IMG/VR virus record: IMGVR_UViG_3300042562_001598
Location: 62,001 to 126,000 of that record
DNA length: 64,000 nucleotides
Strand: one strand, 5' to 3'
Shown: piece after piece, positions 5,279-24,693 of the stretch
Numbering within the stretch: the stretch's first letter is position 1
Layout: every line of letters starts with the position of its first letter
Notes under the pieces: model-generated
What the model was told of the DNA's origin: nothing
The model's database searches: none
What the model saw: the letters and a program-made list of their open reading frames with translations, nothing else
Program-made: the position numbers and the translations under genes

Positions 5279-7534
5279 ATGGGATTTATAATTAAAAATA
5301 CATCGGGGTTGATTAGTACACGATTAACGGATGCAGGTAGGTTGAAATTATCACAAGGAAATTTCAACATTTCTTATTTTCAGGTTGGTGATAGTGAGGT
5401 ATCTTACAATTCATTACCTAATACTTACAATCAATTTACTACTAATATATTAGAACCTAATTTCAATTCACAGAATTTAGCTGGTGTTCCGCAATCAAAT
5501 ATGCAGAATGTAAAATATCCTTATTATGTGGATGGGACTACAGGTAATACATACGGGATTCCAACGATGGCTTCAGCTCCAAGTTCTATTTACAATAGAG
5601 CTGCAATGAGAGGATTTTTTACTGGTGATACAACGGCAACAACAATTAATTGGAGTGCTTTAACTAGTAATGAATATGTTATTAATTCTAATTATATTGT
5701 TGAAATGTCAGGTTTAACTGGTGGAACAACAATTAAGGTTATAACTTCTGGTTGTAATTCAAATAGTGTTAGATTACCTTTAAGTGGTGATTTAATTACT
5801 ATATACTATAATGGACTTGGTAAAAGTAATTGTTATTGTAATCAGTCAAGTAGTGCTTGTACTATGTCAATGAATAGTTGTTATCCAATGATGACTTATA
5901 GAATTATTGATGTTTGTTTGGATGTATTAACATTGGATAGAAAAACACCTGATTTTAGTTATTTAAGTGGAACTTGTTATTACGCTAGAACTTTAGTTTA
6001 TCCACCAAATATGACATCATTATATGATAGTAGTACACCATCAGAACATTGGAGTGATAGTGTATTAAACTTTGAGTCTACTTGTTATGTTGATGAATTT
6101 GATGTTAAGGTTTGGAATATGAATATTCCGTGGTCTGAAAATCCAGCTGGGTTGATATCTACTCAAAACAAAGATTATACTAATTTTGGGTCTATAACTT
6201 ATTTGGGTACTAAAGAATACCTTGGTTATATGTCAAATAGTGGTCAAACAGATACTAGTTCTACTTATTATGTAAATTCATTTGGTGAGATTGTAACCGT
6301 TGAACCTAAAGACCAAAAAGCTATTGCAATTATACATTATACTAATCAGTCAATTGATTTATTTTATGGTGAAAAATTTGCGTTAGAACCTTATGATGCT
6401 AATACACCTGAAGAAAATACTGGTGAAGCAAGAAACTTTAAGTTACATTTACCTTGGTTGATGTGGCATAAAAATCCTGAATGTTGTTTGGGACAAACTT
6501 TTTGGGTTGACCCAGCTGGTTTTGATGACAAAAACTTATTTGAGGTTCAATATATTGAATCAACAAAAAATACGGATATGAATAAACCAGGTATTAGATA
6601 TTATCATTTATGGGATAAAAACGCTAATCCGGATGGATATCCAAATAGAGTTGGGAAAGTATTTCCTGACCAAAAAATCATTGTGATTGATGATGAAGAA
6701 ATAATTGCTGCGATGTCATATAAGTCAAATCGTAATTGGACTTTACCGGCACCTAAAGTTTCTTTACTCACACCAAATACTTGTGACTCAACAACAAATC
6801 AAAGTTCCACAGGTATATTAACGGATGATACCGAGTATTTGTATGTGACTTATAGATTAAGTAACTCAACAACCTTTACGGACTCATTACATTGTAATTA
6901 TTATTCAAAAATACAAGGTCCTAATAATCTGTGTTCTGGATTACCAAGTCAAAATGTTGGTGTAAGATTTGGGGGTGAGTTTAATTGTTTAAATCAAATT
7001 CCTGAAGGTTCATCGGTGTTACAAAATGGTTTTTATGCTGATAAATTTGAAATTATTTGTCAAAAAATGAATAGTGATGGTAGACCAGATTCGTCAGAAT
7101 GGAAAATACTTGATTTTACTGACCAAATTAGTGGTTCAAGTATAAATGATTTTATAACTATGAGTGGATTAACAGGTTCAACATTTGTAATAACACAAGA
7201 GGATTATACTAACGCCCCTTATTATGATTTAAGTGATGATATTATTTTACCAACGGGTTCAACAATGTCACTTAATTTTGGTGATGAATATTATTTTTAT
7301 GGGTCTATTGAGACGGATATTCAAGCAACGATTTATGAAATGAAATATAAGGTTAATTTAGGTCAATCTGAATTTCAAGCAACTTCAAATCCGACTTGGT
7401 CAAATGGTGAAACATCATATATTACTGAAGTTGGTCTTTACGATAAGGATTTTAATCTTATGATTATATCAAAGCTACAATCTCCTGTTTTACGACAGGG
7501 AATTCAACAGTTTTTAGTAAAATTTGATTTTTAA
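5279..7534 (+). CDS. Baseplate/tail-collar-fibre-like structural protein
   Basis: N-terminal RLTDAGRLKLSQG..ISYFQVGDSE and C-terminal YITEVGLYDKDFNLMIISKLQSPVLR resemble the two ends of the phage tail-collar fibre domain; TATTTAT upstream. Confidence 0.6.
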   Translation: MGFIIKNTSGLISTRLTDAGRLKLSQGNFNISYFQVGDSEVSYNSLPNTYNQFTTNILEPNFNSQNLAGVPQSNMQNVKYPYYVDGTTGNTYGIPTMASAPSSIYNRAAMRGFFTGDTTATTINWSALTSNEYVINSNYIVEMSGLTGGTTIKVITSGCNSNSVRLPLSGDLITIYYNGLGKSNCYCNQSSSACTMSMNSCYPMMTYRIIDVCLDVLTLDRKTPDFSYLSGTCYYARTLVYPPNMTSLYDSSTPSEHWSDSVLNFESTCYVDEFDVKVWNMNIPWSENPAGLISTQNKDYTNFGSITYLGTKEYLGYMSNSGQTDTSSTYYVNSFGEIVTVEPKDQKAIAIIHYTNQSIDLFYGEKFALEPYDANTPEENTGEARNFKLHLPWLMWHKNPECCLGQTFWVDPAGFDDKNLFEVQYIESTKNTDMNKPGIRYYHLWDKNANPDGYPNRVGKVFPDQKIIVIDDEEIIAAMSYKSNRNWTLPAPKVSLLTPNTCDSTTNQSSTGILTDDTEYLYVTYRLSNSTTFTDSLHCNYYSKIQGPNNLCSGLPSQNVGVRFGGEFNCLNQIPEGSSVLQNGFYADKFEIICQKMNSDGRPDSSEWKILDFTDQISGSSINDFITMSGLTGSTFVITQEDYTNAPYYDLSDDIILPTGSTMSLNFGDEYYFYGSIETDIQATIYEMKYKVNLGQSEFQATSNPTWSNGETSYITEVGLYDKDFNLMIISKLQSPVLRQGIQQFLVKFDF

Positions 7535-14443: not shown

Positions 14444-15070
14444 ATGGATATCATTATTGACAAGAAACATCATAAGGACCTTACATCTTATTGTAAGTTA
14501 AACGACATAACAGATATTAATGACTTCGTAAATAAGTGTTTTAAGTCCGGATTTGACACAAAAAGGTATGGTCTTATAGGAAATACCCCAGAACCAAAAA
14601 CAATTGAAATTGAGGTCATAAAAGAAGTCCCGGTTGAAGTTATTAAGGAGGTTGAAAAGATTGTTGAAGTCCCAGGACCGGTTCGGGAGGTTGAAGTTAT
14701 CAAAGAGGTTGAAAAGATTGTGATTAAGGAGGTTTTCATTCAGGATTCCGTCCCAAATTTAGACAATATTTGGGACAAAGATAAGTTACTGGAAACAATA
14801 CAAGGGTTGGAAGATGATAAACAAAGACTTTCCACTAAAATTGATGAAATGACCAACGAGATACAAGAATTTTCCACTAAAACGGAAGAAACGGTAAAAA
14901 TTTTCCAAGATAACCAAAAATCTTTGCAAACCACTTTACTCAATCTGAAAAAAGAACTAAAATTGAAAGACGAAAAAATTTCAGAATTAGAAAATAAATT
15001 AACGACCCCCAATGCTGATGGACAGAGAGCCATTTATATGAACGGGTCAAACATTAAACAAACATTATAA
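14444..15070 (+). CDS. Coiled-coil protein with VIKEV(E/P) repeats
   Basis: EVIKEVPVEVIKEVEKIVEVP...VIKEVEKIVIKEV followed by a heptad-rich region. Confidence 0.6.
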   Translation: MDIIIDKKHHKDLTSYCKLNDITDINDFVNKCFKSGFDTKRYGLIGNTPEPKTIEIEVIKEVPVEVIKEVEKIVEVPGPVREVEVIKEVEKIVIKEVFIQDSVPNLDNIWDKDKLLETIQGLEDDKQRLSTKIDEMTNEIQEFSTKTEETVKIFQDNQKSLQTTLLNLKKELKLKDEKISELENKLTTPNADGQRAIYMNGSNIKQTL

Positions 15071-15658: not shown

Positions 15659-17989
15659 ATGAAATACGATTTAGAAATAGAAAAATTAGATAATCCTTAT
15701 ATTCAAGTAGTCTGGGAAGATTTCGCTGAGAATTTTACACAAGAAAAGATTAAAAGTGTAAAACACTATTTTCAGAAAAAATATCTTACTAGTAATGTGA
15801 ATATTATTACAAAGACTAAAGTTACCCAGGAGACGACACATTCTGTTGATATTTCGTTTAATATCTTGGATAGTAATTATCAATTGGAATTGGTTAAATC
15901 GTATTTAAAATCAAAGAATAATGAAAATTATTACGATGAGGTTTGTGCGTTAAATGCCCAAGTGGATAACAATATGTTATTGACCCAAACCGAAGCAACA
16001 CCATTCAAGAAATGGTATATCAAAAACATTGAATTTTCAAACTTCTTATCTTATGGTGAGAATCAAAGATTGGATTTTGAGAAATGTGATGGTATATCTG
16101 TTGTGGAATCAAATCCCCCAAACTTTGGTGGTAAAACAGTTCTATCGGTTGATTTATTATTATTCTTATTCTTTAATGAAACAACAAAAACTTCAAAGGC
16201 TGAAGAAATTTTTAATAGATTTTCTGATAAGAATAAGGTATCTGTAAAGGGTGAAATAATCATTGATGGTGATGAATATGTTATTGTTAGAAACATTGAA
16301 AGAAAGAAGACTAAAGCCGGTGAATGGTCAGTTAAAACAGAATTAGATTTCTTTAAGAAACTATATGATGGTAGCTTACAAAATTTTACTGGTGAACAAA
16401 GAAGGGAGACTGAAAGTTTTATTAAAACATCTATTGGAACCAAGGACGATTTCTTGATGACTATACTAACTACCGCTAGTAATTTAGAGGAGTTAATTGA
16501 CGCTAAACCAACGGCCAGAGGTCAAGTATTATCCAGGTTCATGGGGTTGGACTTCCTTAAGAAAAAGGAAGAGGTTGGTAAAGAGTTATATAGTCAATTC
16601 TCAAAATCAATGTTATCAAACATTTATAATACTGAATCACTAAAAACTGATAACGAAAATTGTCAAGACAATATCACAACATTACTTGACCAGAACAATG
16701 AATTAAATCCAAAACTAGTTGATGTTATGGAGAGAATTCTTAAAGGTCATGATTATAGAGATTCTTTATTAAAGAATAAACATACTGATATTGATGCTGA
16801 AATTAGTAGGTTATCACCGGATACGGTTAATTCTGAAATTGATACATTAAAATTTGATAAGGGAAAAGTTGTTACACAATTAGAAAACCTGAAAGTGGTG
16901 GAACCAACATCGTTTTATCATGAAGATGAACACGATAAGGTTAAAGAAGAATATGATATTGCTTACAAGGAAAAAGTTGTTGTTGATAACAAAATAAAAA
17001 CCTTGGAAGAATTGAAAAGTTCTGTTGGTGATGGGATTAAATGTGAACATTGTGGTATTGAGCTAATGAACGCAACAATTACTCAATCAAAAATTGGGGA
17101 ACTTGACGGATTTATCATACGCAAAGACGAAATTTTGGGGTTAATGACTGATTTATCCACCAAAGAACAAAGTTTTACCAAACTAAAAAAAGAATTTGAT
17201 GAATATGAGAAAAACAAACTCATCAAAGAAAAGTACGAATTAAATATTGAATCTTATGATTTGAAAATCAAGAACTTAAGTGACAAGTTATCCAGGTATT
17301 ACGAACTTCAGGAGAAGATATCCGAAAACCAAAAAACTGAAACCTTATTGATTAAAGCCGGTCTTAAAATTGATGAACTTGAAAAAGAGAAATATTCTAT
17401 CAAAAAAACAATTGATGATAACATTAATAAAGTCGGTATAAATAACGATAAGATTAAAGAGAATAATATTAAGATAAATAAAATCGCTGAAGAATCTGAA
17501 AAGGAAAAAATTTATAAAATCTATTTAGAAATTTATGGTAAAAATGGTATAACTAAATCAATTATGAAGACTATGATGCCACTTATAAATTCTGAACTTC
17601 AAAGGTTATTACAGGATAGTTGTCACTTTAGACTTGAGGTTAAAATCAATGATAAGAACGAGGTTGATTTCGTTATGGTAGATAACAATTCCCAAGTTGA
17701 AAAGAGTATGTCATCCGGGTCTGGGTATGAAAGAACCATTGCTTCATTAGCTCTTAGAGCCGTGTTAAGTAAAATATGTTCATTGCCAAAACCAAATATT
17801 ATGGTAATGGATGAGGTGTTTGGTAAGATTTCCAACGATAACCTGGAAATGGTTGGGGAATTCTTTATCAAAATTAAAGAATACTTTGAAAGGATATTCC
17901 TTATTACTCATAACCCTTTGGTTAACAATTGGGCTGATAATGTTGTTAAGATTAAAAAGGAAGATAACATTAGTTATGTTAGTCAGTAA
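15659..17989 (+). CDS. sbcC: SbcC/Rad50/gp46-like SMC ATPase
   Basis: NFLSYG, Walker A NFGGKT, zinc hook CEHC, signature SGSGYE, Walker B MDEVFG, ITH. Confidence 0.9.
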   Translation: MKYDLEIEKLDNPYIQVVWEDFAENFTQEKIKSVKHYFQKKYLTSNVNIITKTKVTQETTHSVDISFNILDSNYQLELVKSYLKSKNNENYYDEVCALNAQVDNNMLLTQTEATPFKKWYIKNIEFSNFLSYGENQRLDFEKCDGISVVESNPPNFGGKTVLSVDLLLFLFFNETTKTSKAEEIFNRFSDKNKVSVKGEIIIDGDEYVIVRNIERKKTKAGEWSVKTELDFFKKLYDGSLQNFTGEQRRETESFIKTSIGTKDDFLMTILTTASNLEELIDAKPTARGQVLSRFMGLDFLKKKEEVGKELYSQFSKSMLSNIYNTESLKTDNENCQDNITTLLDQNNELNPKLVDVMERILKGHDYRDSLLKNKHTDIDAEISRLSPDTVNSEIDTLKFDKGKVVTQLENLKVVEPTSFYHEDEHDKVKEEYDIAYKEKVVVDNKIKTLEELKSSVGDGIKCEHCGIELMNATITQSKIGELDGFIIRKDEILGLMTDLSTKEQSFTKLKKEFDEYEKNKLIKEKYELNIESYDLKIKNLSDKLSRYYELQEKISENQKTETLLIKAGLKIDELEKEKYSIKKTIDDNINKVGINNDKIKENNIKINKIAEESEKEKIYKIYLEIYGKNGITKSIMKTMMPLINSELQRLLQDSCHFRLEVKINDKNEVDFVMVDNNSQVEKSMSSGSGYERTIASLALRAVLSKICSLPKPNIMVMDEVFGKISNDNLEMVGEFFIKIKEYFERIFLITHNPLVNNWADNVVKIKKEDNISYVSQ

Positions 17990-18002: not shown

Positions 18003-18037
18003 AATAACCATCAAATTACTTGATGGTTATTTTTTTT
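18003..18037 (+). terminator. Intrinsic terminator overlapping the -33 box of the next promoter
   Basis: AATAACCATCAA-attac-TTGATGGTTATT + T-run; TAcaTTTG at 18043-50. Confidence 0.75.
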
Positions 18038-18078
18038 ATGTTTACATTTGTACTCTAATCAAATACTAAAACAATAAA

Positions 18079-19062
18079 ATGGAAAATAGTTTATATCCTA
18101 AAGTTAGTTACGACCGAATGTTTATTTATGCTTGGTATGAGAAAACCAATGAATATGAAACTAAATTTGGTGAACACTGGGTGAAAGCAGATGTTGACCC
18201 TAAAACTGATATTGACAAATATGTTAGAAGTTCTATGAATAGACGAAAAGACCTTTTTGATGATGGGACTATTGTTGTTGAATCAATATGGGATGTAACA
18301 GAATATTCTAAAAAATATGATAAATATTACCCTAAATCACATGTTGATGATAAGATTCGTAAAGAAATCGGGTATGTTAAACAAAGTGAGGTTCATAATC
18401 TTCACTTTGCAATTTTAGTTGAGAAAGTAAATGAGATTCTTAACAAAGAAAATCAACAAAAACCTGAAGTAGGTTTATCTACAGCACAATACGATGATGC
18501 GGTTTTAGTTTTGAACGCTATTGACAATGGTAAACGTGTAATTTTTTCTGAATTAGCGGCAAGATATGGTAAAACGATTTGGTCTTCAGCGATAGCTGTT
18601 GAGACGGGTATTCCAATTGTTATTGTAGCTTCTTATGTGTTAACATCATTTACCTCGTTCAAAAATGATATTATGGATTTTCAACAATTTCAAAACATTA
18701 AGACTGTTGATACTTCGGATGGCGATTATAAAGAACAAATTAAAAAATACGTAGATGAAGGAAAACAAGTTATGGTATTTCTATCACTATGTAATGGTAT
18801 AGGTCGTAATGACCGTATTAACTTCTTAAATAACCTTAATGTTCAAAGATTAGTTTTTGTTGATGAAGCGGATTATGGTGCTCACCAAAAGAAACAATTT
18901 GAAGCTTTAAAGGCATTAGTGAGTAATGATGATATTTTGATATTAATGACCGGAACTAACTCAGATAGAGCTTCATCAGATTGGGATATTGATTTTATGT
19001 TGTCTACAACATATTTTGAACTTTTAGTCAATAAAAAAGAGTCCATGGCTTTGGTTAATTAA
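18079..19062 (+). CDS. SF2 helicase N-terminal (RecA1/ResIII-like) half with an N-terminal putative nuclease-like domain
   Basis: Q-motif-like LSTAQ, Walker A AARYGKT, Walker B FVDEADYG, motif III LMTGT; no motifs IV-VI. Confidence 0.75.
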   Translation: MENSLYPKVSYDRMFIYAWYEKTNEYETKFGEHWVKADVDPKTDIDKYVRSSMNRRKDLFDDGTIVVESIWDVTEYSKKYDKYYPKSHVDDKIRKEIGYVKQSEVHNLHFAILVEKVNEILNKENQQKPEVGLSTAQYDDAVLVLNAIDNGKRVIFSELAARYGKTIWSSAIAVETGIPIVIVASYVLTSFTSFKNDIMDFQQFQNIKTVDTSDGDYKEQIKKYVDEGKQVMVFLSLCNGIGRNDRINFLNNLNVQRLVFVDEADYGAHQKKQFEALKALVSNDDILILMTGTNSDRASSDWDIDFMLSTTYFELLVNKKESMALVN

Positions 19063-19104
19063 TATATTATAACTATTTTTGATAAAAAATAAAAAATCAA
19101 TATT

Positions 19105-20349
19105 ATGTTAAAGTTTTTCAAAAAAGATATTAAAAGAGATTTAATATACGCTTCAGTTCAGGGGTATCAATTAGATTTGAGACCGGTTGTTGAAAAAGCA
19201 AAACAACTTCATTCTAACCATGATGAATTACCATCTTGGCGTAAACTTGTGGAAAACCCTAAAAAAGGTAAAGGTTGGTTTGTTACATTACTGGAGGGCA
19301 TGTTCAAAGGAAAACATAATCTTAATGGAATTAATGTTGAGAATCTTGTGGATTCAACTAATGGAGAATTATCAAATCGTCGTGTTACTATGATGTTTTT
19401 TCCGGATAATACTAAAGTTGCTAATCTTATAACTATTGGTAAAATAGCCCAAGAAACTTTGGGAGGTTGGAAAATTAAAGTCCTTAACGGGATGACGGTT
19501 AAAGATAATTCTGAATGTGAACAAAAAGTTAAAGAATGTATAGAATCTACTGATGATAATGTTTTGATTATCTCATCTAAAATGGCTCAACGGTCTTTTT
19601 CCCAAAGTTTAATAACGGAAGTTTATTTAGCTTATGATAATGGTCAAGATGGTGCAACAATTCAAAAGATGTCCAGAGGTTTGACTTCAAATACTTCTGA
19701 TAAAATAGCTCGTATTTTTTCATTATCATTTGACCCTAATCGTGATGATAAAATAGATACTTTAGTATTTCAAGCAGCTTTAAATCAGGTTGAAAAGAAA
19801 GGTAAAACAGATATTCGAAAAGAATTACGAAGAGTGTATGAGTCAATTGACATTTATTCTTGTAATGATGATGGTGCGTTTAAGTTAAATGTTGATGATT
19901 ATGTCAAACAAGCACTTGAGAAAAAAGGTATTTTTCGTGTTATGGGTAAAAAGTCTGACCTTACTATGCTTAGTAAAGAACAACTAAATGCTTTGGCTCA
20001 AGGTAATGTGAGTTTTCTTCGTAATGAAATGAAAGAAAAAACTGAAATTGGTAAAACAAAAGACCCTTTACCTAAAAACATTGGTAAAACAGAAACGGAA
20101 AAACCTAATGATAAAGAAATTAACAAAGTTCGTGAGGTTATTATTAGTATTATTGAACATTCTGATATTATTATGTTAGCAGCTAAAAATCAGGGAGGTA
20201 AAAATATTATTGAAGCTTTAGCCATCATTGAAAAAAATAATTGGACTTCAATAATAGAAAAAGAATTTGAAGTGAGATATGATGTTATTAAGTATGTATT
20301 TACGATGGGGGTTATAAAGAATGAGTGGGTTGATATTCTTCACGGATAA
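19105..20349 (+). CDS. Putative SF2 helicase C-terminal (RecA2) half
   Basis: VLIISSKMAQRSFS (motif V-like), IQKMSRGLT (motif VI-like); own promoter TTTG-N20-TAttTTTG at 19050-81. Confidence 0.55.
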   Translation: MLKFFKKDIKRDLIYASVQGYQLDLRPVVEKAKQLHSNHDELPSWRKLVENPKKGKGWFVTLLEGMFKGKHNLNGINVENLVDSTNGELSNRRVTMMFFPDNTKVANLITIGKIAQETLGGWKIKVLNGMTVKDNSECEQKVKECIESTDDNVLIISSKMAQRSFSQSLITEVYLAYDNGQDGATIQKMSRGLTSNTSDKIARIFSLSFDPNRDDKIDTLVFQAALNQVEKKGKTDIRKELRRVYESIDIYSCNDDGAFKLNVDDYVKQALEKKGIFRVMGKKSDLTMLSKEQLNALAQGNVSFLRNEMKEKTEIGKTKDPLPKNIGKTETEKPNDKEINKVREVIISIIEHSDIIMLAAKNQGGKNIIEALAIIEKNNWTSIIEKEFEVRYDVIKYVFTMGVIKNEWVDILHG

Positions 20350-20398
20350 TTTTGGATATTAAATATTATTACCTATTTTTGTAAAAAAAAAAGAAATT

Positions 20399-21574
20399 AT
20401 GTTTTCACGAATAAAATTTGATATTAGTGCTATGGTTACTGATATTTATAGTAAAATACCTCAAGAGATGTTTGAGTCTGATGTAACTACTTTTGTAGAT
20501 ATACAAGCGGCTGGATTACAATTTATCATTCCTTTAATAGAGATACTTCGTAAGAAAGGACATTCTGACGATAACATTCGTAATAGAGTGTATGCTTATG
20601 CCGAGAATGATTTATATTTAAATTACGTTATGTTTAAATATAAGGGCTTACCAATAACGTATAAAATATATGATGAAAAAATTAATATGAAATTTGATGT
20701 TGTAATTGGTAATCCACCTTATAATAAACAAGTTGGACCTAAAAAAACTCAACCTGTGTGGCCTAAATTTGTTGAAAAATCTTTTGATATGTGTAAGGAA
20801 GACGGTTACGTTAGTTTAATACATCCAAATGGATGGAGAAATTTTGATGGAAAGTTTAAGGATATTCAAAAATTATTATTATCTAAATGTGTTAAATATA
20901 TTAATATGAATTCACCTAGTGATGGTGTAGAAGTATTTAAAGCTCAAATTGCTTTTGATTATTATCTTATACAAAATAAAAGTCATGAAAATGAATTGGT
21001 TGATATTGTTGATTATGATGATAAATTACACAATATTGACATTAGAAATTTTGATTTTATACCAAATAGTAATATAGATTTAGTTTATTCTTTAGTTGCT
21101 AAAGAAGGTGAGGAGACTGTTAAAATTTTACATAGTTATTCTGATTATGAAACCAGAAAAAATTATATGTCAAAAGTTAGGACTGAAGAACATATTTACC
21201 CTTGTGTGTATACTGTAAAAACTAATGACACATTAACATATTTTTATAGCAATAAAAACGATAACGGACATTTTGGCGTTCCCAAAGTAATATGGGGTAA
21301 CGGTGCTAGTTATGGTGTGATTATTGACGAAAATGGTGAATATGGTTTGACACAGTTCTCATACGCTATTGTTGATGAACCTAATAATTTACCGTTAATA
21401 AAAAAAGTATTGCAAAGTAAGTGTTTTATTCAGAATATTATGGGGTATTATGGTGGTACAACGTTAATAATATTTAACAGAAAAATTATCTCAACATTTC
21501 GTAAAGATTTTTGGAAAGAATTTCTTGATGAAAATAACAATGTTATAGAACCAAAACTTACAGATGTTAAATAA
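20399..21574 (+). CDS. N6-adenine DNA methyltransferase catalytic/TRD part (Eco57I-like)
   Basis: MKFDVVIGNPPY motif IV, GYVSLIHP..W; degenerate motif I (FVDIQAAGLQF); promoter TTTG-N19-TAttTTTG at 20351-81. Confidence 0.8.
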   Translation: MFSRIKFDISAMVTDIYSKIPQEMFESDVTTFVDIQAAGLQFIIPLIEILRKKGHSDDNIRNRVYAYAENDLYLNYVMFKYKGLPITYKIYDEKINMKFDVVIGNPPYNKQVGPKKTQPVWPKFVEKSFDMCKEDGYVSLIHPNGWRNFDGKFKDIQKLLLSKCVKYINMNSPSDGVEVFKAQIAFDYYLIQNKSHENELVDIVDYDDKLHNIDIRNFDFIPNSNIDLVYSLVAKEGEETVKILHSYSDYETRKNYMSKVRTEEHIYPCVYTVKTNDTLTYFYSNKNDNGHFGVPKVIWGNGASYGVIIDENGEYGLTQFSYAIVDEPNNLPLIKKVLQSKCFIQNIMGYYGGTTLIIFNRKIISTFRKDFWKEFLDENNNVIEPKLTDVK

Positions 21575-21986
21575 ATATAAAAAACATATAAGAGACAGAG
21601 TTTATATGTCGGGTATTGATAGAGATAAACTTAGAATTAAACAAACTGCTGAGGTATTTACACCTCAGCATCTTGTTATAACAACATTAGATAAATTGGA
21701 ATTAGAAAATCCGGAATTATTTACTGACCCAACAAAAACTTTTATAGATAATAGTTGTGGTGATGGTGAGTTCCTGGGGGAGATTGTAATACGAAAGATG
21801 GAACGTAGTGGTTGTACATTAGAACAAGCTTTATCAACCACTTATGGTGTTGATATAATGGAAGATAATATTGAGGAATGTAAAAAGAGATTGGCTGGTC
21901 CTACACCTACTGAAGAAATATACAGAATCCTTAATAAAAATATTGTTTGTCACGATGGTTTAACTTATAATTACGATTTTAATTAA
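21564..21986 (+). CDS. Stand-alone SAM-binding N-terminal part of an N6-adenine methyltransferase
   Basis: AEVFTP (motif X), FIDNSCGDGEFL (motif I), YGVDI, NIVCHDGL; no NPPY. Confidence 0.75.
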   Translation: MLNKYKKHIRDRVYMSGIDRDKLRIKQTAEVFTPQHLVITTLDKLELENPELFTDPTKTFIDNSCGDGEFLGEIVIRKMERSGCTLEQALSTTYGVDIMEDNIEECKKRLAGPTPTEEIYRILNKNIVCHDGLTYNYDFN

Positions 21987-22040
21987 AAAAATTTGGTAAT
22001 TCAAAAAAAGGTGTTATCTTTGATAAAAATAAATGACACT

Positions 22041-22601
22041 ATGAAAACTCAAACAAAATACATCTTATTTGTTTTTACTAAACAAGATAATTTAAATGAA
22101 TTAGTAACATTGATTGCTGAAGAACTTACACCAATTTCTTATTCCCCTAAGATTAATTATTATTATGATAATCAATCTATGATATTCACATTTGATTCCC
22201 AGGAAGAATTTGGTGATATTAAAGAGTATGTTGACATTCTGTTTGACGACTTAGATATGACATATGTGTTATTACCTTACAACACTGACAATATGTCATA
22301 CAATACACCTATTGATGTGTCAAATCATTTATTTGACCTAAATTTACCTGAAGATGTGTCAGGTAATATTGATGCGGGGCGAAAATTGTTACATGATGAA
22401 TTAACTGACAACGTTATGTCATTTTTCAAAAAGATTGAATTTAATGAAGAAATTGACGAAGATGATGATGAAGATATTTTATTAAAACAAATAAAACCAT
22501 TACCTTTGACCTTGGACAACATTTTAGATAAAATAAATGATTGCGGGATTTCTTCTCTAACAAATGATGAATTAAATTTATTAAACAAATACTCTAAATA
22601 A
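22041..22601 (+). CDS. Hypothetical acidic protein
   Basis: ATG at 22041 follows TTTG-N19-TAtcTTTG; C-terminal LDNILDKINDCGISSLT. Confidence 0.6.
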   Translation: MKTQTKYILFVFTKQDNLNELVTLIAEELTPISYSPKINYYYDNQSMIFTFDSQEEFGDIKEYVDILFDDLDMTYVLLPYNTDNMSYNTPIDVSNHLFDLNLPEDVSGNIDAGRKLLHDELTDNVMSFFKKIEFNEEIDEDDDEDILLKQIKPLPLTLDNILDKINDCGISSLTNDELNLLNKYSK

Positions 22602-22604
22602 TAT

Positions 22605-23405
22605 ATGAAAACTAAAAGCTATTCAATTCCGATTAATCAAGAAGAAATTAATGTTTATCTTAAAGATATTCGTAAGATAAAAGTTATGACTCCTGAACGA
22701 GAGAGAGAACTATCAGCACTTATAAGTTCTGGGACATTAACTGAAAAAGAAATTCAACAAGTTAATAAGGAACTTTTGGAAGGTAACTTACGATTTGTAA
22801 TTACGGTCGCTAAACAATATCAAAACCAAGGATTACCATTTCCTGACTTAATCGCTGAAGGTAATTTAGGTCTTATGAAAGCCATTCATAATTTTGACTG
22901 GTCAAAAAACCTAAGATTTATTTCTTATGCTGTATGGTGGGTTAAACAATCTATTTTACAATCATTGAATGATAATGCTAGAACTATACGACTACCGGTT
23001 AATGTTGTTCAGGATTTACATCGTGCTAAGAAAGAGATTGAAAATAATGGTGGAAAACTTGAAGATAAGTTTCAAAATTTACCATCAATGATATGTTTAG
23101 ATATGAGTATTAATGAAGATGGTGACACTTTAGTTGACATAATTAAAAACGACCAAGCGGATATGCCGGATGAAATATTTAATAGTAAGGATTTATTAAA
23201 ACAAAAACTTATGTCTTTATTACATATGTTAAATGAAAGAGAAAAAATCATTATTGAGGATTATTTTGGATTGTCGGGTGCACCAAGAACACTTGAGGAT
23301 ATTGGTAATGATTTTGGATTAACTAAAGAAAGGGTTAGACAAATCAAAGAGAAGTCAATTAGATTTTTAAGAAACAATTCTAAAGAATTATTTGATTATG
23401 TATAA
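22605..23405 (+). CDS. RNA polymerase sigma70-family factor, Bacteroidota primary-sigma-like
   Basis: YLKDI (1.2), NLRFVITVAKQYQNQGL, DLIAEGNLGL, FISYAVWW, RTIRLP (region 2), TLEDIG...LTKERVRQI (region 4). Confidence 0.92.
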   Translation: MKTKSYSIPINQEEINVYLKDIRKIKVMTPERERELSALISSGTLTEKEIQQVNKELLEGNLRFVITVAKQYQNQGLPFPDLIAEGNLGLMKAIHNFDWSKNLRFISYAVWWVKQSILQSLNDNARTIRLPVNVVQDLHRAKKEIENNGGKLEDKFQNLPSMICLDMSINEDGDTLVDIIKNDQADMPDEIFNSKDLLKQKLMSLLHMLNEREKIIIEDYFGLSGAPRTLEDIGNDFGLTKERVRQIKEKSIRFLRNNSKELFDYV

Positions 23406-23425
23406 GATTAAATGAAAAAATATAG

Positions 23426-23458
23426 AAACCTTCTATTTATTATAATAGAAGGTTTTTT
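23426..23458 (+). terminator. Intrinsic terminator containing a TATTTAT motif
   Basis: AAACCTTCTATT...AATAGAAGGTTT + T-run. Confidence 0.7.
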
Positions 23459-23482: not shown

Positions 23483-23755
23483 ATGAAAACAATTGTTAAT
23501 TTTATTGATGTATGGGGTAACCGAATAGTATTTTTACTAGTATTGGTTATTTTTATGAAAACTTGTACCACAAATGGGAAAGTTGATAAGGTGGCTCAAA
23601 GAGTGGATTCTTTAGAGGTAACACTAACTGAAGGTATTAAGATTGAGGGCTTAAAATCTGAAAAAAGAATGATTCAGTCAACGGATAGAAAAATTTTAGA
23701 TGTTCAACGACAGACTGAAATTGATAAAGAATTAAACAAACTTATAAAGAAATAA
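23483..23755 (+). CDS. Small N-terminally membrane-anchored protein
   Basis: Hydrophobic IVFLLVLVIF followed by KTC and a coiled coil. Confidence 0.6.
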   Translation: MKTIVNFIDVWGNRIVFLLVLVIFMKTCTTNGKVDKVAQRVDSLEVTLTEGIKIEGLKSEKRMIQSTDRKILDVQRQTEIDKELNKLIKK

Positions 23756-24693
23756 TGAATTTAATTTGGAAGTGGTTAAAAGAAAATCCGATAAGGTCAA
23801 TGTTTTTAATACCAATTTTATTGGTTACGGTAATATCCATATCACATGTTGTTGCTTGGTATTCATTATCTAACCCAATTAGTTGGGCTATTTATCTATC
23901 TATAGCTATTGAAGCGGCTGCGATGACAGCATTGGTAGCTGCAACTAATAGAATTAAAGGTGGAGTCTGGATAATGTTTGGTTTAGTAACTTTAATTCAG
24001 ATGATTGGTAATATATTCTTCTCATATAAAGAGATTGATTCTAATAGTGACTTATTTAAGTCTTGGGTTGAATTAACTAGTCCTATTTGGGAACTGTTAG
24101 GTTCTGATATTAACGATGTGGTGTCATTAAAAAGATGGTTAGCGTTTTTAGAAGGTGGGTTATTACCTATAATTTCTTTAACTTCTTTGCACTTTTTTGT
24201 TAAATATGATGAACTTGACCTGGAGAATAAAAAAGTTTTAAATGAAGTTTTTGAAGAAAAAAAAAATGAATCTGAAGATTTAGATGATTCTATTAATGAA
24301 TCAATTGATGTTGAAGTTATGGAATCTGAAGATTTAGAAACTGAAGATATTCTTGAATCTGAAGTGTTAAAACTTGAAAGTAATATTGAAGAAGTTATAG
24401 AGGATGAGGTTCAAGATGTCACCGACACAAATGTCACCGACACAAATGTCGGAGACATAACTGAAAGTGTTACTAACACTGACCTTATCAGTGAAGAACA
24501 ACAAAGAATAATTGATAATACTAATTTAAGTAATTTAGAGTATGTTAAAAAAATGCTCGGAATTCCAAACCCTATTACACAAACTACAGAACCGGAAATT
24601 GAAAAAGAAGACGAAATTATAATTGATGACAATACTAATGATGGTGAAATTTCAGATAATAAAGTAAGACTAACTTATACAAAAAATAGTTAA
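23755..24693 (+). CDS. Four-TM membrane protein with acidic C-terminal tail
   Basis: About four hydrophobic helices then an E/D-rich tail; 15-bp tandem duplication at 24416-24450. Confidence 0.6.
   Translation: MNLIWKWLKENPIRSMFLIPILLVTVISISHVVAWYSLSNPISWAIYLSIAIEAAAMTALVAATNRIKGGVWIMFGLVTLIQMIGNIFFSYKEIDSNSDLFKSWVELTSPIWELLGSDINDVVSLKRWLAFLEGGLLPIISLTSLHFFVKYDELDLENKKVLNEVFEEKKNESEDLDDSINESIDVEVMESEDLETEDILESEVLKLESNIEEVIEDEVQDVTDTNVTDTNVGDITESVTNTDLISEEQQRIIDNTNLSNLEYVKKMLGIPNPITQTTEPEIEKEDEIIIDDNTNDGEISDNKVRLTYTKNS

What the first reader, a model, noticed from the sequence alone, without database searches (positions are those of the whole stretch)
18079..21986. Four-gene cassette: split SF2 helicase plus split N6-methyltransferase (R-M-like system on a phage)
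Seen: gene 1 has only helicase motifs Q/I/II/III plus a ~120-aa N-terminal domain (IYAW...KFGE, reminiscent of GIY-YIG/T5orf172). Gene 2 has motif V/VI-like sequences. Gene 3 has NPPY and a TRD but a degenerate SAM-binding motif I. Gene 4 has motifs X and I (FIDNSCGDG) but no NPPY. Genes 1-3 each have their own host-type promoter (18043, 19074, 20374), so the helicase break looks like a maintained split rather than a frameshift; genes 3 and 4 overlap. Inference: complementary halves assemble into a type IIG/ISP/III-like restriction-modification complex expressed early, for self-methylation and exclusion of competing phages or attack on host DNA.
Basis: partly seen in the sequence, partly recalled or inferred. 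Interest (0 to 1): 0.76.

Follow-up and report, generated by a model that had tools for sequence, protein, structure and literature searches.

The report
Phage four-gene helicase–methyltransferase restriction-like module
A lake-water jumbo phage carries a conserved, phage-only four-gene module: a nuclease-like head on a DNA motor split into two genes, an adenine methyltransferase, and a stand-alone "half" methyltransferase. It resembles ATP-driven restriction-modification enzymes of bacteria and has never been characterised.

Summary
The cassette is a conserved module, not a chance neighbourhood. The same gene order occurs in 46 viral contigs and in Synechococcus phage S-CAM7. It is essentially absent from 185,579 bacterial and archaeal species genomes.

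- **g1 and g2:** they are the two RecA lobes of one SF2 ATPase, preceded by a T5orf172/GIY-YIG-fold domain. About half of the relatives encode g1+g2 as one ~750-aa protein. The split/fused state flipped at least 5 times, both halves are under purifying selection, and one phage has 3.8 kb between them. The split is real and functional.
- **Fusions:** rare relatives fuse g1-g2-g3 into ~1150 aa. The best solved-structure match by Foldseek is the Type ISP enzyme LlaBIII.
- **"Split methyltransferase":** this reading is not right. g3 is a complete TaqI/CamA-like N6-adenine methyltransferase with its own motif I in nearly all relatives; only this phage's copy deviates. g4 is an extra paralogous SAM-binding half (motifs X to III) that stays a separate gene even beside triple fusions.

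Best reading: a phage-borne, multi-subunit relative of Type ISP / YeeABC-type ATP-dependent restriction-modification. Nuclease activity and the role of g4 are inferred, not shown. Verdict: new variant of a known kind, uncharacterised, moderately high interest.

The parts
18003..18031 (+). Terminator-like hairpin with T-run. It closes the upstream SbcC-like gene's unit, so g1 starts a new unit.
   Evidence: (12-bp stem)
18043..18050 (+). TACATTTG, a Bacteroidota-type -7 box (TAnnTTTG), 36 nt before the g1 ATG. Putative promoter.
   Evidence: the consensus itself is from established knowledge, function untested
18079..18453 (+). g1 residues 1-125: T5orf172/GIY-YIG-fold N-terminal domain. Conserved residues Y17, K29-F-G31-E, R50, D72, D90, E104, H106. 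Putative nuclease head.
   Evidence: AF2 pLDDT 93.9; AFDB hits T5orf172/GIY-YIG/MUG113, probability 0.97-1.0; HIGLE, Slx1 and I-TevI among the top VIA hits
18454..19062 (+). g1 residues 126-327: RecA1 lobe of an SF2 ATPase, with the Q motif, motif I AARYGKT, motif II DEAD and motif III TGT.
   Evidence: relatives hit Pfam ResIII and PADLOC PDLC03626
19063..19104 (+). 42-nt A+T-rich spacer between g1 and g2, with several stop codons and a TATTTTTG box at 19074-19081. It shares TATTATnACnTATTTTTGnAAAAAA with the g3 leader.
19105..20349 (+). g2: RecA2 lobe (motif V/VI region, with the arginine of QKMSRGLT) plus a C-terminal helical region. It completes the ATPase site of g1.
   Evidence: Helicase_C in relatives
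20374..20381 (+). TATTTTTG box 25 nt before the g3 ATG. Putative promoter.
20399..21574 (+). g3: complete gamma-class (TaqI/CamA/Eco57I-like) N6-adenine DNA methyltransferase with a C-terminal TRD.
   Evidence: Pfam Eco57I 3.5e-14; phrog_3689; family profile against CamA 6.4e-12, TaqI 2e-8, BseCI and HsdM
20492..20524 (+). g3 motif I region (F32-F42), FVDIQAAGLQF. It deviates from the family consensus FLDPAxGGGQF.
   Evidence: unchanged in independent metagenomes
20711..20722 (+). g3 motif IV, NPPY (N105-Y108).
21564..21986 (+). g4: stand-alone SAM-binding half of a gamma-class methyltransferase. It has motif X FTP at 21657-21665, motif I D-N-S-C-G-D-G-E-F-L at 21747-21776, and motifs II and III. 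It has no motif IV and no TRD.
   Evidence: profile against BseCI residues 8-104 and CamA 22-159; Atlas model pTM 0.82

Best explanation
**What it is (well supported)**
- The cassette is a phage-restricted, multi-subunit relative of single-chain ATP-dependent restriction-modification enzymes: Type ISP, and the helicase-bearing enzymes that REBASE/PADLOC call 'IIG'.
- g1 and g2 together form one SF2 double-stranded-DNA translocase. Walker A/B lie on g1 and the motif VI arginine on g2, so ATP hydrolysis needs both chains.
- The translocase carries a T5orf172/GIY-YIG-fold head at its N-terminus.
- g3 is a TaqI/CamA-like N6-adenine methyltransferase with its own target-recognition domain.
- g4 is a separately encoded SAM-binding half-methyltransferase.

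**How it most likely works (inferred)**
- g3, probably together with g4, recognises a short DNA site and methylates phage DNA there.
- On unmethylated sites in host or competitor DNA, the g3-bound complex activates the g1/g2 motor.
- The motor translocates along the DNA, and the GIY-YIG-like head cuts it.
- Extra g3 paralogues in related phages add further specificities to the same motor.
For: **Conserved linkage**
- g1-g2-g3-g4 occur in the same order in S-CAM7 and in 46 IMG/VR loci.

**g1 and g2 are one protein**
- 74 of the 150 best cluster representatives are g1+g2 fusions of 730-840 aa.
- A fused relative (51% identical to g1, 48% to g2) models as N-domain + RecA1 + RecA2 + helical tail, with pLDDT 88.

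**Physical link to the methyltransferase**
- g1-g2-g3 triple fusions exist: P0076 (1176 aa) and P0035 (1122 aa).
- Atlas holds viral clusters carrying ResIII + T5orf172 + Eco57I.

**Relation to restriction-modification motors**
- The best Foldseek PDB hit is LlaBIII (Type ISP, E 3e-10). It also gives the longest VIA alignment (414 residues, Z 19.3).
- 12 of 59 fused relatives hit PADLOC REase_MTase_IIG model PDLC03626 (best 5e-24); where the positions were shown (P0004, P0010) the match lies at 117-305. The methyltransferase part of P0076 hits the same model at positions 1002-1069, which is co-linear.
- 21 of 59 relatives hit Pfam ResIII.

**Nuclease-type head**
- AF2 model pLDDT 93.9. AFDB neighbours are T5orf172/GIY-YIG/MUG113. 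The GIY-YIG nucleases HIGLE, Slx1 and I-TevI are among the top PDB alignments.
- A divergent branch of the family has a bona fide T5orf172 domain at the same position.
- Polar residues are nearly invariant.

**Function beyond methylation**
- Loci whose g3 has lost NPPY (L006, L026, L007) keep g1/g2 under purifying selection.

**Precedents**
- Type ISP architecture (PMC4666363).
- YeeA/YeeB/YeeC: methyltransferase + helicase + GIY-YIG (PMC2731913, PMC9973331).
- One res gene with three mod genes (bioRxiv 10.64898/2026.05.01.722158).
Against: - No nuclease, ATPase or methyltransferase activity has been measured.
- T5orf172 domains have also been read as DNA-binding or recombination modules (PMC9973331, PMC7824862).
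- The window's own g1 and g2 hit no Pfam or PADLOC model directly. The links go through relatives and predicted structures.
- VIA Z-scores of the motor do not single out restriction enzymes: RadD scores Z 20.2 and many SF2 proteins score 17-19.
- The N-domain matches to solved GIY-YIG nucleases are weak (Z 3.6-5.6).
- This phage's g3 has a deviant motif I. If it is inactive, an active restriction arm would endanger the phage itself.
- Restriction by the B. subtilis YeeABC cluster could not be shown (PMC9973331).
- The family is virtually confined to phages, which fits an anti-restriction role equally well.
Confidence: 0.5

Rival explanations
1. Modification only. The module is an anti-restriction device. 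The g1/g2 motor loads or drives g3-type methyltransferases along phage DNA so that all sites are methylated quickly. The T5orf172 domain only binds DNA, and nothing is cut. This is the logic proposed for the P1 DarB methylase-helicase dyad and for ATPase-loaded MtsC in MANTIS.
For: - The family is phage-restricted.
- Related phages carry up to five g3 paralogues with different TRDs, each behind its own promoter. This is the usual pattern for escaping several host restriction systems (PMC7824862).
- The DarB dyad is proposed to need its ATPase for methylation (PMC5512222).
- MANTIS shows ATP-dependent methyltransferase loading (bioRxiv 10.64898/2026.09.23.753747).
Against: - Lineages whose g3 has a ruined NPPY motif and no g4 keep g1/g2 under purifying selection.
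- The N-domain keeps nearly invariant polar residues at T5orf172 signature positions.
- The closest structural and profile relatives are restriction enzymes.
- The domain order is the reverse of DarB's, and the motor is not specifically SNF2.
Confidence: 0.3
2. True split methyltransferase. g4 supplies SAM binding in trans to g3, whose own motif I is dead, so g3+g4 together make one enzyme.
For: - Against solved methyltransferases, the matches are complementary. g4 aligns to BseCI residues 8-104 and CamA 22-159. g3's best matches start at motif IV (BseCI 106-318, CamA 148-338).
- The window's g3 has a deviant motif I.
- g4 is lost exactly where g3's catalytic motif IV is ruined, which ties g4 to methyl transfer.
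Against: - g3 keeps its own N-terminal Rossmann half. Nearly all homologues have an intact DPAxGGGQF and still have g4.
- The g3 profile aligns to HsdM from motif I onward.
- g4 is a paralogue of g3's N-terminus, not a missing piece.
- g4 is modelled as a compact self-standing domain, pTM 0.82.
- No g3-g4 fusion was seen, not even beside the triple fusions.
Confidence: 0.1
3. Unrelated neighbours. g1/g2 is a recombination or repair helicase-nuclease belonging with the adjacent SbcC/gp46-type genes, and g3/g4 are an independent orphan methyltransferase pair.
For: - An SbcC-like gene lies just upstream in the window. A Metallophos + SMC_N pair lies upstream in L060.
- T5orf172 has been proposed to act in recombination (PMC7824862).
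- RadD, a repair helicase, gives the top VIA Z-score.
Against: - g1-g2-g3 fusions exist as single proteins.
- Linkage to g3/g4 is near-universal across loci, while the SbcC gene is not conserved next to it.
- In L045, methyltransferase genes are inserted between g1 and g2.
Confidence: 0.07
4. Decay. The cassette is a broken single-chain enzyme, split by frameshifts or nonsense mutations, and no longer works.
For: Fused relatives exist. g3's motif I deviates.
Against: - dN/dS is 0.06-0.25 for both halves in split-split comparisons.
- The junction is a clean stop/start overlap, or a spacer carrying a promoter.
- The same split occurs in S-CAM7 at about 30% identity.
- The sequence is identical in metagenomes from 2016 to 2025.
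- All ATPase motifs are intact.
Confidence: 0.03

Closest known systems
Type ISP restriction-modification enzymes (LlaGI, LlaBIII; PDB 4xqk)
   Same: - Same domain order: nuclease head, SF2 dsDNA-translocase-type ATPase, linker, gamma-class N6-adenine methyltransferase, TRD (PMC4666363).
- Natural g1-g2-g3 fusions reproduce this order in one chain.
- LlaBIII is the top Foldseek PDB hit and gives the longest VIA alignment.
- ISP_coupler and EcoEI_R_C families appear among g2's feature look-alikes.
   Different: - The head is T5orf172/GIY-YIG-fold, not Mrr/PD-(D/E)xK.
- The system is encoded by phages, not bacteria or plasmids.
- It is split into 2-4 genes.
- It has an extra stand-alone half-methyltransferase (g4).
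- Some relatives have one motor with several methyltransferases.
- The window's own proteins show no significant sequence match to Type ISP enzymes.
YeeA(DnmA)-YeeB-YeeC clusters (MmeI-like methyltransferase + DEAD-type helicase + T5orf172/GIY-YIG protein)
   Same: It has the same three activities in a conserved cluster, proposed to be a restriction-modification system in which the methyltransferase gives specificity and the helicase plus GIY-YIG protein cut (PMC2731913, PMC9973331).
   Different: - Here T5orf172 is fused to the N-terminus of the motor instead of being a separate protein.
- The methyltransferase is Eco57I/TaqI/CamA-like, not MmeI-like.
- g4 has no counterpart there.
- Those clusters are bacterial, whereas this family is phage-only.
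PADLOC REase_MTase_IIG model PDLC03626 (about 1359-position single-chain enzyme)
   Same: Fused g1g2 relatives match it (12/59, best 5e-24), at positions 117-305 where the positions were shown (P0004, P0010). The methyltransferase part of triple fusion P0076 matches positions 1002-1069, in the same order.
   Different: The window's g1 and g2 do not reach significance themselves. The model's own nuclease type and its members are not known to me.
Phage P1 DarB-type methylase-helicase dyad
   Same: It is a phage-encoded pairing of an EcoKI/TaqI-like adenine methylase with an SF2 ATPase, thought to act together on DNA (PMC5512222).
   Different: - Opposite order: LPD36-methyltransferase-SNF2 in one giant virion protein.
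- No T5orf172 head, no TRD swapping and no g4.
Type III restriction-modification (Res + Mod)
   Same: - Separate motor-nuclease and methyltransferase subunits.
- ResIII Pfam hits in 21/59 relatives.
[quoted passage not shown]
   Different: - Res carries a C-terminal PD-(D/E)xK nuclease.
- Mod is beta-class with an internal TRD.
- Here the nuclease-like domain is N-terminal and GIY-YIG-fold, and the methyltransferase is gamma-class.

Membership tests
SF2 helicase-like ATPase | Two RecA-like lobes carrying motifs Q, I, II, III (lobe 1) and V, VI (lobe 2) | tested here: met
   Motifs are present and nearly invariant, divided between g1 and g2. The fused relative models as two RecA lobes, with VIA Z 17-20 to many SF2 proteins. 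Relatives hit ResIII and Helicase_C.
Type ISP restriction-modification enzyme | Single polypeptide | tested here: not met
   There are four genes in the window. Rare relatives fuse g1-g2-g3, but g4 stays separate.
Type ISP restriction-modification enzyme | N-terminal Mrr-family PD-(D/E)xK nuclease | tested here: not met
   The N-domain has a T5orf172/GIY-YIG fold.
Type ISP restriction-modification enzyme | SF2 motor followed by a coupler, a gamma N6-adenine methyltransferase and a TRD, in that order | tested here: inconclusive
   The order holds in gene order and in the triple fusions. LlaBIII is the best Foldseek hit. A coupler is suggested only by a feature look-alike.
Type ISP restriction-modification enzyme | ATP-driven translocation and collision-dependent cleavage | not testable with these tools
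   This needs biochemistry.
GIY-YIG / T5orf172 superfamily | Characteristic alpha/beta fold with a beta-hairpin core | tested here: met
   AF2 pLDDT 93.9. Most of the 30 best AFDB cluster hits that carry a name are T5orf172, GIY-YIG or MUG113 (probability 0.9-1.0, TM about 0.5). HIGLE, Slx1 and I-TevI are among the VIA hits.
GIY-YIG / T5orf172 superfamily | Match to the family's sequence profile | tested here: inconclusive
   - The window's N-domain and 84 homologues give no Pfam hit.
- The divergent branch of the same protein family does: P0130 hits T5orf172 (E 4e-4, above the cut-off), and the best family hit is 8.9e-8.
- hhalign of that branch's N-termini against T5orf172 gives 98% probability.
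- hhalign of the window-type N-domains against that branch gives P 0.0026 over 84 columns.
GIY-YIG / T5orf172 superfamily | Catalytic residues (Tyr, Arg, metal-binding Glu) in place | tested here: inconclusive
   Y17, K29, G31, R50, D72, D90, E104 and H106 are conserved and align with T5orf172 signature positions. No residue-level superposition or assay was done.
Gamma-class N6-adenine DNA methyltransferase (TaqI/CamA/Eco57I-like) | Motif order X-I-II-III-IV...-TRD with (D/N/S)PP(Y/F) | tested here: met
   g3 hits Pfam Eco57I, has NPPY, and its profile hits CamA, TaqI, BseCI and HsdM. The window copy's motif I deviates, so its activity is uncertain.
Gamma-class N6-adenine DNA methyltransferase (TaqI/CamA/Eco57I-like) | The same features, asked of g4 | tested here: not met
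   g4 has motifs X, I, II and III only. It ends before motif IV and has no TRD.
Type III restriction-modification | Res with a C-terminal PD-(D/E)xK nuclease; beta-class Mod with an internal TRD | tested here: not met
   The nuclease-like domain is N-terminal and GIY-YIG-fold. The methyltransferase is gamma-class with a C-terminal TRD.
YeeA/YeeB/YeeC-type cluster | MmeI-like methyltransferase + separate helicase + separate T5orf172/GIY-YIG protein | tested here: inconclusive
   All three activities are present, but T5orf172 is fused to the motor and g3 is not MmeI-like. Homology to YeeB/YeeC was not tested.
DarB-type methylase-helicase dyad | LPD36-methyltransferase-SNF2 order in one virion-borne polyvalent protein | tested here: not met
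   The order is reversed, the genes are separate, and the motor is not specifically SNF2 (PMC5512222).

The most novel reading that the evidence does not exclude
T4-like and jumbo phages that lack hypermodified bases may use this module as their own self/non-self system.
- g3-type methyltransferases would mark phage DNA.
- A split SF2 motor with a GIY-YIG-type head would shred unmarked host or rival DNA.
- The always-separate half-methyltransferase g4 would be a new kind of trans-acting SAM-binding licensing subunit. In many relatives it carries a terminal docking peptide, possibly for the replisome. It would couple methylation, or the methylation/restriction decision, to SAM supply or to replication.
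Probability: 0.22. Interest if true: 0.82.

Novelty: new variant of a known kind. Interest (0 to 1): 0.62.

Why it matters
- **Reversed roles.** ATP-dependent restriction-modification is regarded as a bacterial weapon against phages. Here a large, uncharacterised family puts the same parts in phage hands. It comprises 267 clusters at 50% identity, Atlas clusters of over 1000 members, and every protein is annotated as hypothetical.
- **Motor assembly.** The motor splits and re-fuses between its two RecA lobes at least five times. This is a natural experiment on whether an SF2 ATPase can be assembled in trans.
- **Modular specificity.** One motor serves one to five methyltransferases with swapped TRDs.
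- **Unknown subunit.** The conserved orphan SAM-binding half-domain g4 has no known counterpart in restriction-modification enzymology.
- **A route to experiments.** Synechococcus phage S-CAM7 is the only cultured phage in the collection searched that carries the cassette.

Tried and rejected
- **DNA similarity.** The cassette has no DNA match in 50,697 phage records.
- **Direct family scans.**
  - The window's g1 and g2 have no PADLOC hit and only sub-threshold Pfam/NCBIfam matches; g1 hits one PHROG of unknown function.
  - The links had to go through relatives.
- **Profile against PDB.** The g1g2 family profile hits only XPD, at motif I, E 0.006.
- **Pfam on N-domains.** 84 N-domains scanned singly gave no T5orf172 hit.
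- **hhalign.** The N-domain profile against five Flavobacteriales T5orf172 domains gave only 18 columns at 4% probability.
- **Foldseek PDB with the N-domain model.** Nothing below E 0.26. AFDB and the wide VIA search were needed.
- **Own genome.** T5orf172 (Pfam) is not found there, and there is no second g3 or g4.
- **Sigma-70 promoter scan.** At chance.
- **Frameshift or assembly-error explanation of the split.** Rejected.
- **g3+g4 as halves of one enzyme.** Rejected as the general rule.
- **Named homologues.** All 87 hits are 'hypothetical protein' or unnamed.
- **Bacterial genomes.** One 5-kb MAG contig only.
- **Not possible with these tools.**
  - Multimer structure prediction of g1+g2 and g3+g4.
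  - Model coordinates could not be read, so conserved residues were not mapped onto the fold.

Full report
**The window and the observation**

- g1: 18079-19062, 327 aa.
- g2: 19105-20349, 414 aa.
- g3: 20399-21574, 391 aa.
- g4: 21564-21986, 140 aa, overlapping g3 by 11 nt.

- g1 has a ~125-aa N-terminal domain, then AARYGKT, VDEADYG and MTGT.
- g2 has QRSFS ... IQKMSRGLT.
- g3 has GNPPY and an odd motif I (DIQAAGLQF).
- g4 has FTP and DNSCGDGEF without NPPY.

Direct family scans were thin.
- g3 hits Pfam Eco57I (3.5e-14).
- g4 hits PHROG families of small 'DNA methyltransferase' proteins.
- g1 hits one PHROG of unknown function.
- g2 hits nothing.
- PADLOC gives nothing for g1 or g2.

The sequence is not an assembly artefact. 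Contigs from four separate lake-water metagenome studies (2016, 2020, 2023, 2025) cover the region with 0-1 substitutions and no indels. They span the g1|g2 spacer and g3's motif I.

**The cassette is a conserved module**

tblastn against 50,697 phage records found one cultured phage, Synechococcus phage S-CAM7. It has four adjacent genes of 319, 448, 353 and 133 aa, in the same order, that match g1 to g4 at 27-35% identity.

A degenerate-pattern scan of IMG/VR with a g2 alignment returned 46 loci.
- g1 lies directly before g2 in all but one of them (L045, described below).
- A g3-type methyltransferase follows in nearly all, and a g4 gene follows the first g3.

An exhaustive phmmer search of g1 against 1.84 billion cluster representatives gave 267 hits, 181 of them at E<=1e-10. 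ESM Atlas clusters of the g2 type hold over 1000 members, 99% viral. All 87 close relatives of a fused homologue are 'hypothetical protein' or unnamed.

In one genome for each of 185,579 bacterial and archaeal species, the same scan found a single 5-kb MAG contig from Crocinitomicaceae. The family is in practice phage-restricted.

**g1 and g2 are one ATPase, repeatedly split and fused**

Of the 150 best representatives, 74 contain only the g1 part, 74 are g1+g2 fusions of about 730-840 aa, and 2-3 are longer. Among the loci, 14 have a single ORF of 743-777 aa.

On a maximum-likelihood tree of 37 distinct loci, the split/fused label needs 6 changes. Starred branches force at least 5. Sister loci such as L008 (split) and L013 (fused) differ in state.

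Split junctions take three forms:
- A stop/start overlap (AATGCTTAA).
- TAATG.
- A short spacer carrying a near-consensus promoter, for example TTGACA-17-TATAAT in L034.

In L045, three methyltransferase genes (3.8 kb) lie between g1 and g2. dN/dS for g1 and g2 in split-split pairs is 0.06-0.25; dS is near saturation, so the values are rough.

A fused relative, P0004, is 51% identical to g1 and 48% to g2. It models with pLDDT 88.4 as N-domain, RecA1, an insert, RecA2 and a helical tail. The window's break falls right after the last helix of RecA1. The Walker A/B residues are on g1 and the motif VI arginine is on g2, so hydrolysis should need both chains. That last point is inference from SF2 enzymology.

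**The N-terminal domain of g1**

- With an 84-sequence alignment, residues 1-130 model at pLDDT 93.9.
- Foldseek against AlphaFold DB clusters returns mostly T5orf172, GIY-YIG nuclease and MUG113 entries, at probability 0.9-1.0 and TM about 0.5.
- A Foldseek-independent search of PDB puts several GIY-YIG nucleases among its top hits: HIGLE (Z 5.6), Slx1 (4.8, 4.4) and I-TevI (3.6). All are weak.
- Foldseek against PDB found nothing.

Sequence evidence is indirect.
- No Pfam hit for the window's domain or for 84 homologues.
- A poor hhalign against five genuine T5orf172 domains.
- However, a divergent branch of the same protein family carries a recognisable T5orf172 domain at the same position. 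P0130 has T5orf172 at 8-118, ResIII at 135-299 and Helicase_C. The best family hit is 8.9e-8.
- hhalign of that branch's N-termini against T5orf172 gives 98% probability.
- The window-type N-domains align to that branch over 84 columns with P 0.0026. The signature positions correspond: YxW to YxY, KFGE to KIGxT, RIR to RI, ExH to EWF.
- Y17, K29, G31, D72 and D90 are invariant or nearly so.

Whether the domain cuts DNA is not shown.

**Link to the methyltransferase and to restriction enzymes**

P0076 (1176 aa, on a 178.6-kb contig) and P0035 (1122 aa) are g1-g2-g3 in one chain. Each is followed by a separate small g4-type gene. Atlas structure neighbours of g2 include:
- Viral clusters annotated ResIII + T5orf172 + Eco57I.
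- Bacterial clusters named Type III res or RM.MpnORF110-like.

The fused model's best Foldseek PDB hit is the Type ISP enzyme LlaBIII (4xqk, E 3.2e-10), followed by Snf2-type remodellers and SauUSI; HsdR of EcoR124I appears at rank 45. In the VIA re-alignment, RadD scores highest (Z 20.2). LlaBIII has Z 19.3 with the longest alignment, 414 residues. Many SF2 proteins score 17-19, so the structure shows an SF2 motor but does not prove a restriction-type motor.

Profiles add support.
- 21 of 59 fused relatives hit Pfam ResIII.
- 12 of 59 hit PADLOC model PDLC03626 (REase_MTase_IIG; best 5e-24), at positions 117-305 in the two members for which positions were shown.
- The methyltransferase part of P0076 hits the same model at positions 1002-1069, which is co-linear.

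**g3 and g4**

An alignment of 41 distinct g3-type proteins shows a complete gamma-class enzyme:
- A conserved N-terminal helix.
- Motif I, FLDPAxGGGQF.
- Motif II, RVYGxE.
- Motif IV, GNPP(Y/F).
- A variable C-terminal TRD.

The family profile hits CamA (6.4e-12), TaqI, BseCI, and HsdM from motif I onward. Only the window's g3 has DIQAAGLQF. Its activity cannot be judged from sequence.

g4 homologues are 36-60% identical to the window's copy. They carry textbook motifs X (GEVFTP), I (LDxSCGDGQFL), II (YGVD) and III (NIVxxDAL), and stop just before motif IV. The g4 profile matches only the N-terminal parts of solved enzymes: BseCI residues 8-104 and CamA 22-159. g4 cross-hits the N-termini of g3 proteins, so it is a paralogue of that half, not the missing piece of g3. 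The Atlas model of g4 is confident (pTM 0.82), and its neighbours are viral 130-170-aa proteins of the same kind.

Other observations on g3 and g4:
- The phage genome has one g3 and one g4.
- Related phages have two to five g3 paralogues that share the catalytic half but differ in TRD.
- The three loci whose first g3 has a ruined motif IV (SNPNF, SNPAH, GAPPF) all lack g4. This represents at least two independent events.
- Loci with an intact motif IV almost always have g4. This ties g4 to methyl transfer.
- g1/g2 stay under purifying selection in those three lineages. This argues that the motor does more than assist methylation.

**Expression signals**

A terminator-like hairpin at 18003-18031 precedes g1. 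TAnnTTTG, the Bacteroidota -7 box by established knowledge, sits 36, 31 and 25 nt before the g1, g2 and g3 start codons. The motif's total count is at chance, but it is enriched about 3-fold upstream of + strand genes: 13 of 85 against 4.2 +/- 2.0 expected. The g2 and g3 leaders share a longer motif. Relatives from hosts with sigma-70-type promoters have near-consensus promoters in the same spacers. Separate promoters are therefore plausible; timing is untested.

**Interpretation**

The module has the parts and the order of a Type ISP enzyme (PMC4666363). It has the same three activities as the YeeA/YeeB/YeeC clusters, for which a methyltransferase-directed helicase plus GIY-YIG cutter was proposed (PMC2731913). 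Restriction by the B. subtilis copy of that cluster could not be shown (PMC9973331).

I therefore read the cassette as a phage-borne, multi-subunit variant of ATP-dependent restriction-modification. g3 (with g4) marks phage DNA, and the g1/g2 motor with its GIY-YIG-type head acts on unmarked DNA.

The main rival is a modification-only anti-restriction machine. In that reading the motor loads or drives the methyltransferases, as proposed for DarB (PMC5512222) and shown for a different ATPase in MANTIS (bioRxiv 10.64898/2026.09.23.753747). The many TRD variants and the phage-only distribution favour it. The conserved nuclease-type head, and the retention of g1/g2 where g3 is catalytically dead, count against it.

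The role of g4 is unknown.

**Verdict**

It is right on the split helicase, the N-domain and the Type ISP/III-like kinship. It is wrong on the 'split methyltransferase'. It is untested on function.
- Novelty: a new variant of a known kind, widespread and uncharacterised.

Noticed in passing
g4 homologues in L004-L048 (e.g. L004:8505-8975, L028:8500-9135); absent from window 21564-21986: Most g4 homologues end in a charged or low-complexity linker plus a terminal hydrophobic-aromatic peptide such as LFDF, LFEF or LFQ. It looks like a docking motif and recalls, from memory, the clamp-binding C-termini of T4/RB69 replication proteins. The window's g4, L038 and L040 lack it.
   Followed up: no
L006:7244-8368, L026:7229-8446, L007:5376-6473: These g3 copies have a ruined motif IV (SNPNF, SNPAH, GAPPF), and these loci lack g4. 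g1/g2 remain under purifying selection there.
   Followed up: partly
L009 and L010/L011 (g2 ends at 7284): L009 has g4 but no g3. L010 and L011 keep only a ~186-aa TRD-less g3 remnant before g4. The methylation arm is being remodelled in this clade.
   Followed up: no
L045:2101-5953: Three extra g3 paralogues lie between g1 and g2. Each sits behind a copy of the same ~70-nt spacer, which carries a near-consensus TTGACT-17-TATAAT promoter. This looks like tandem duplication of promoter+methyltransferase units.
   Followed up: partly
window 21647-21670: A perfect 9-10 bp inverted repeat (TGCTGAGGT ... ACCTCAGCA) lies inside g4, over the codons of motif X. The scan scored it as terminator-like on both strands.
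   Followed up: no
window 19063-19104 and 20350-20398: The g2 and g3 leaders share a ~25-nt motif, TATTATnACnTATTTTTGnAAAAAA, which is longer than the TAnnTTTG box alone.
   Followed up: no
L001:4320-4650 (S-CAM7 g1 homologue): The S-CAM7 N-domain lacks the KFGE signature that is invariant elsewhere. Its head domain may be degenerate.
   Followed up: no
window 15659-17989; L060:294-3079: An SbcC/gp46-like gene lies directly upstream of the cassette in the window. A Metallophos + SMC_N pair lies upstream of the triple-fusion gene in L060. This may be a shared genome position next to recombination nuclease genes.
   Followed up: no
window 21993-23405: Downstream lie a 202-aa protein whose C-terminus matches DUF6576 (7e-07), and a phage sigma-70-family factor with regions 1.2, 2 and 4. 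The next terminator-like hairpin is at 23424-23457, so g1 through the sigma gene may form one unit.
   Followed up: no
window 14444-15070 and 23755-24693: ORFs with internal peptide repeats: EVIKEVEKIVE-type repeats in the first and TDTNV-type repeats in the second.
   Followed up: no
LR756508.1:280039-281598: An unannotated 484-kb uncultured phage record holds a distant fused relative of g1g2, at 23-26% identity.
   Followed up: no
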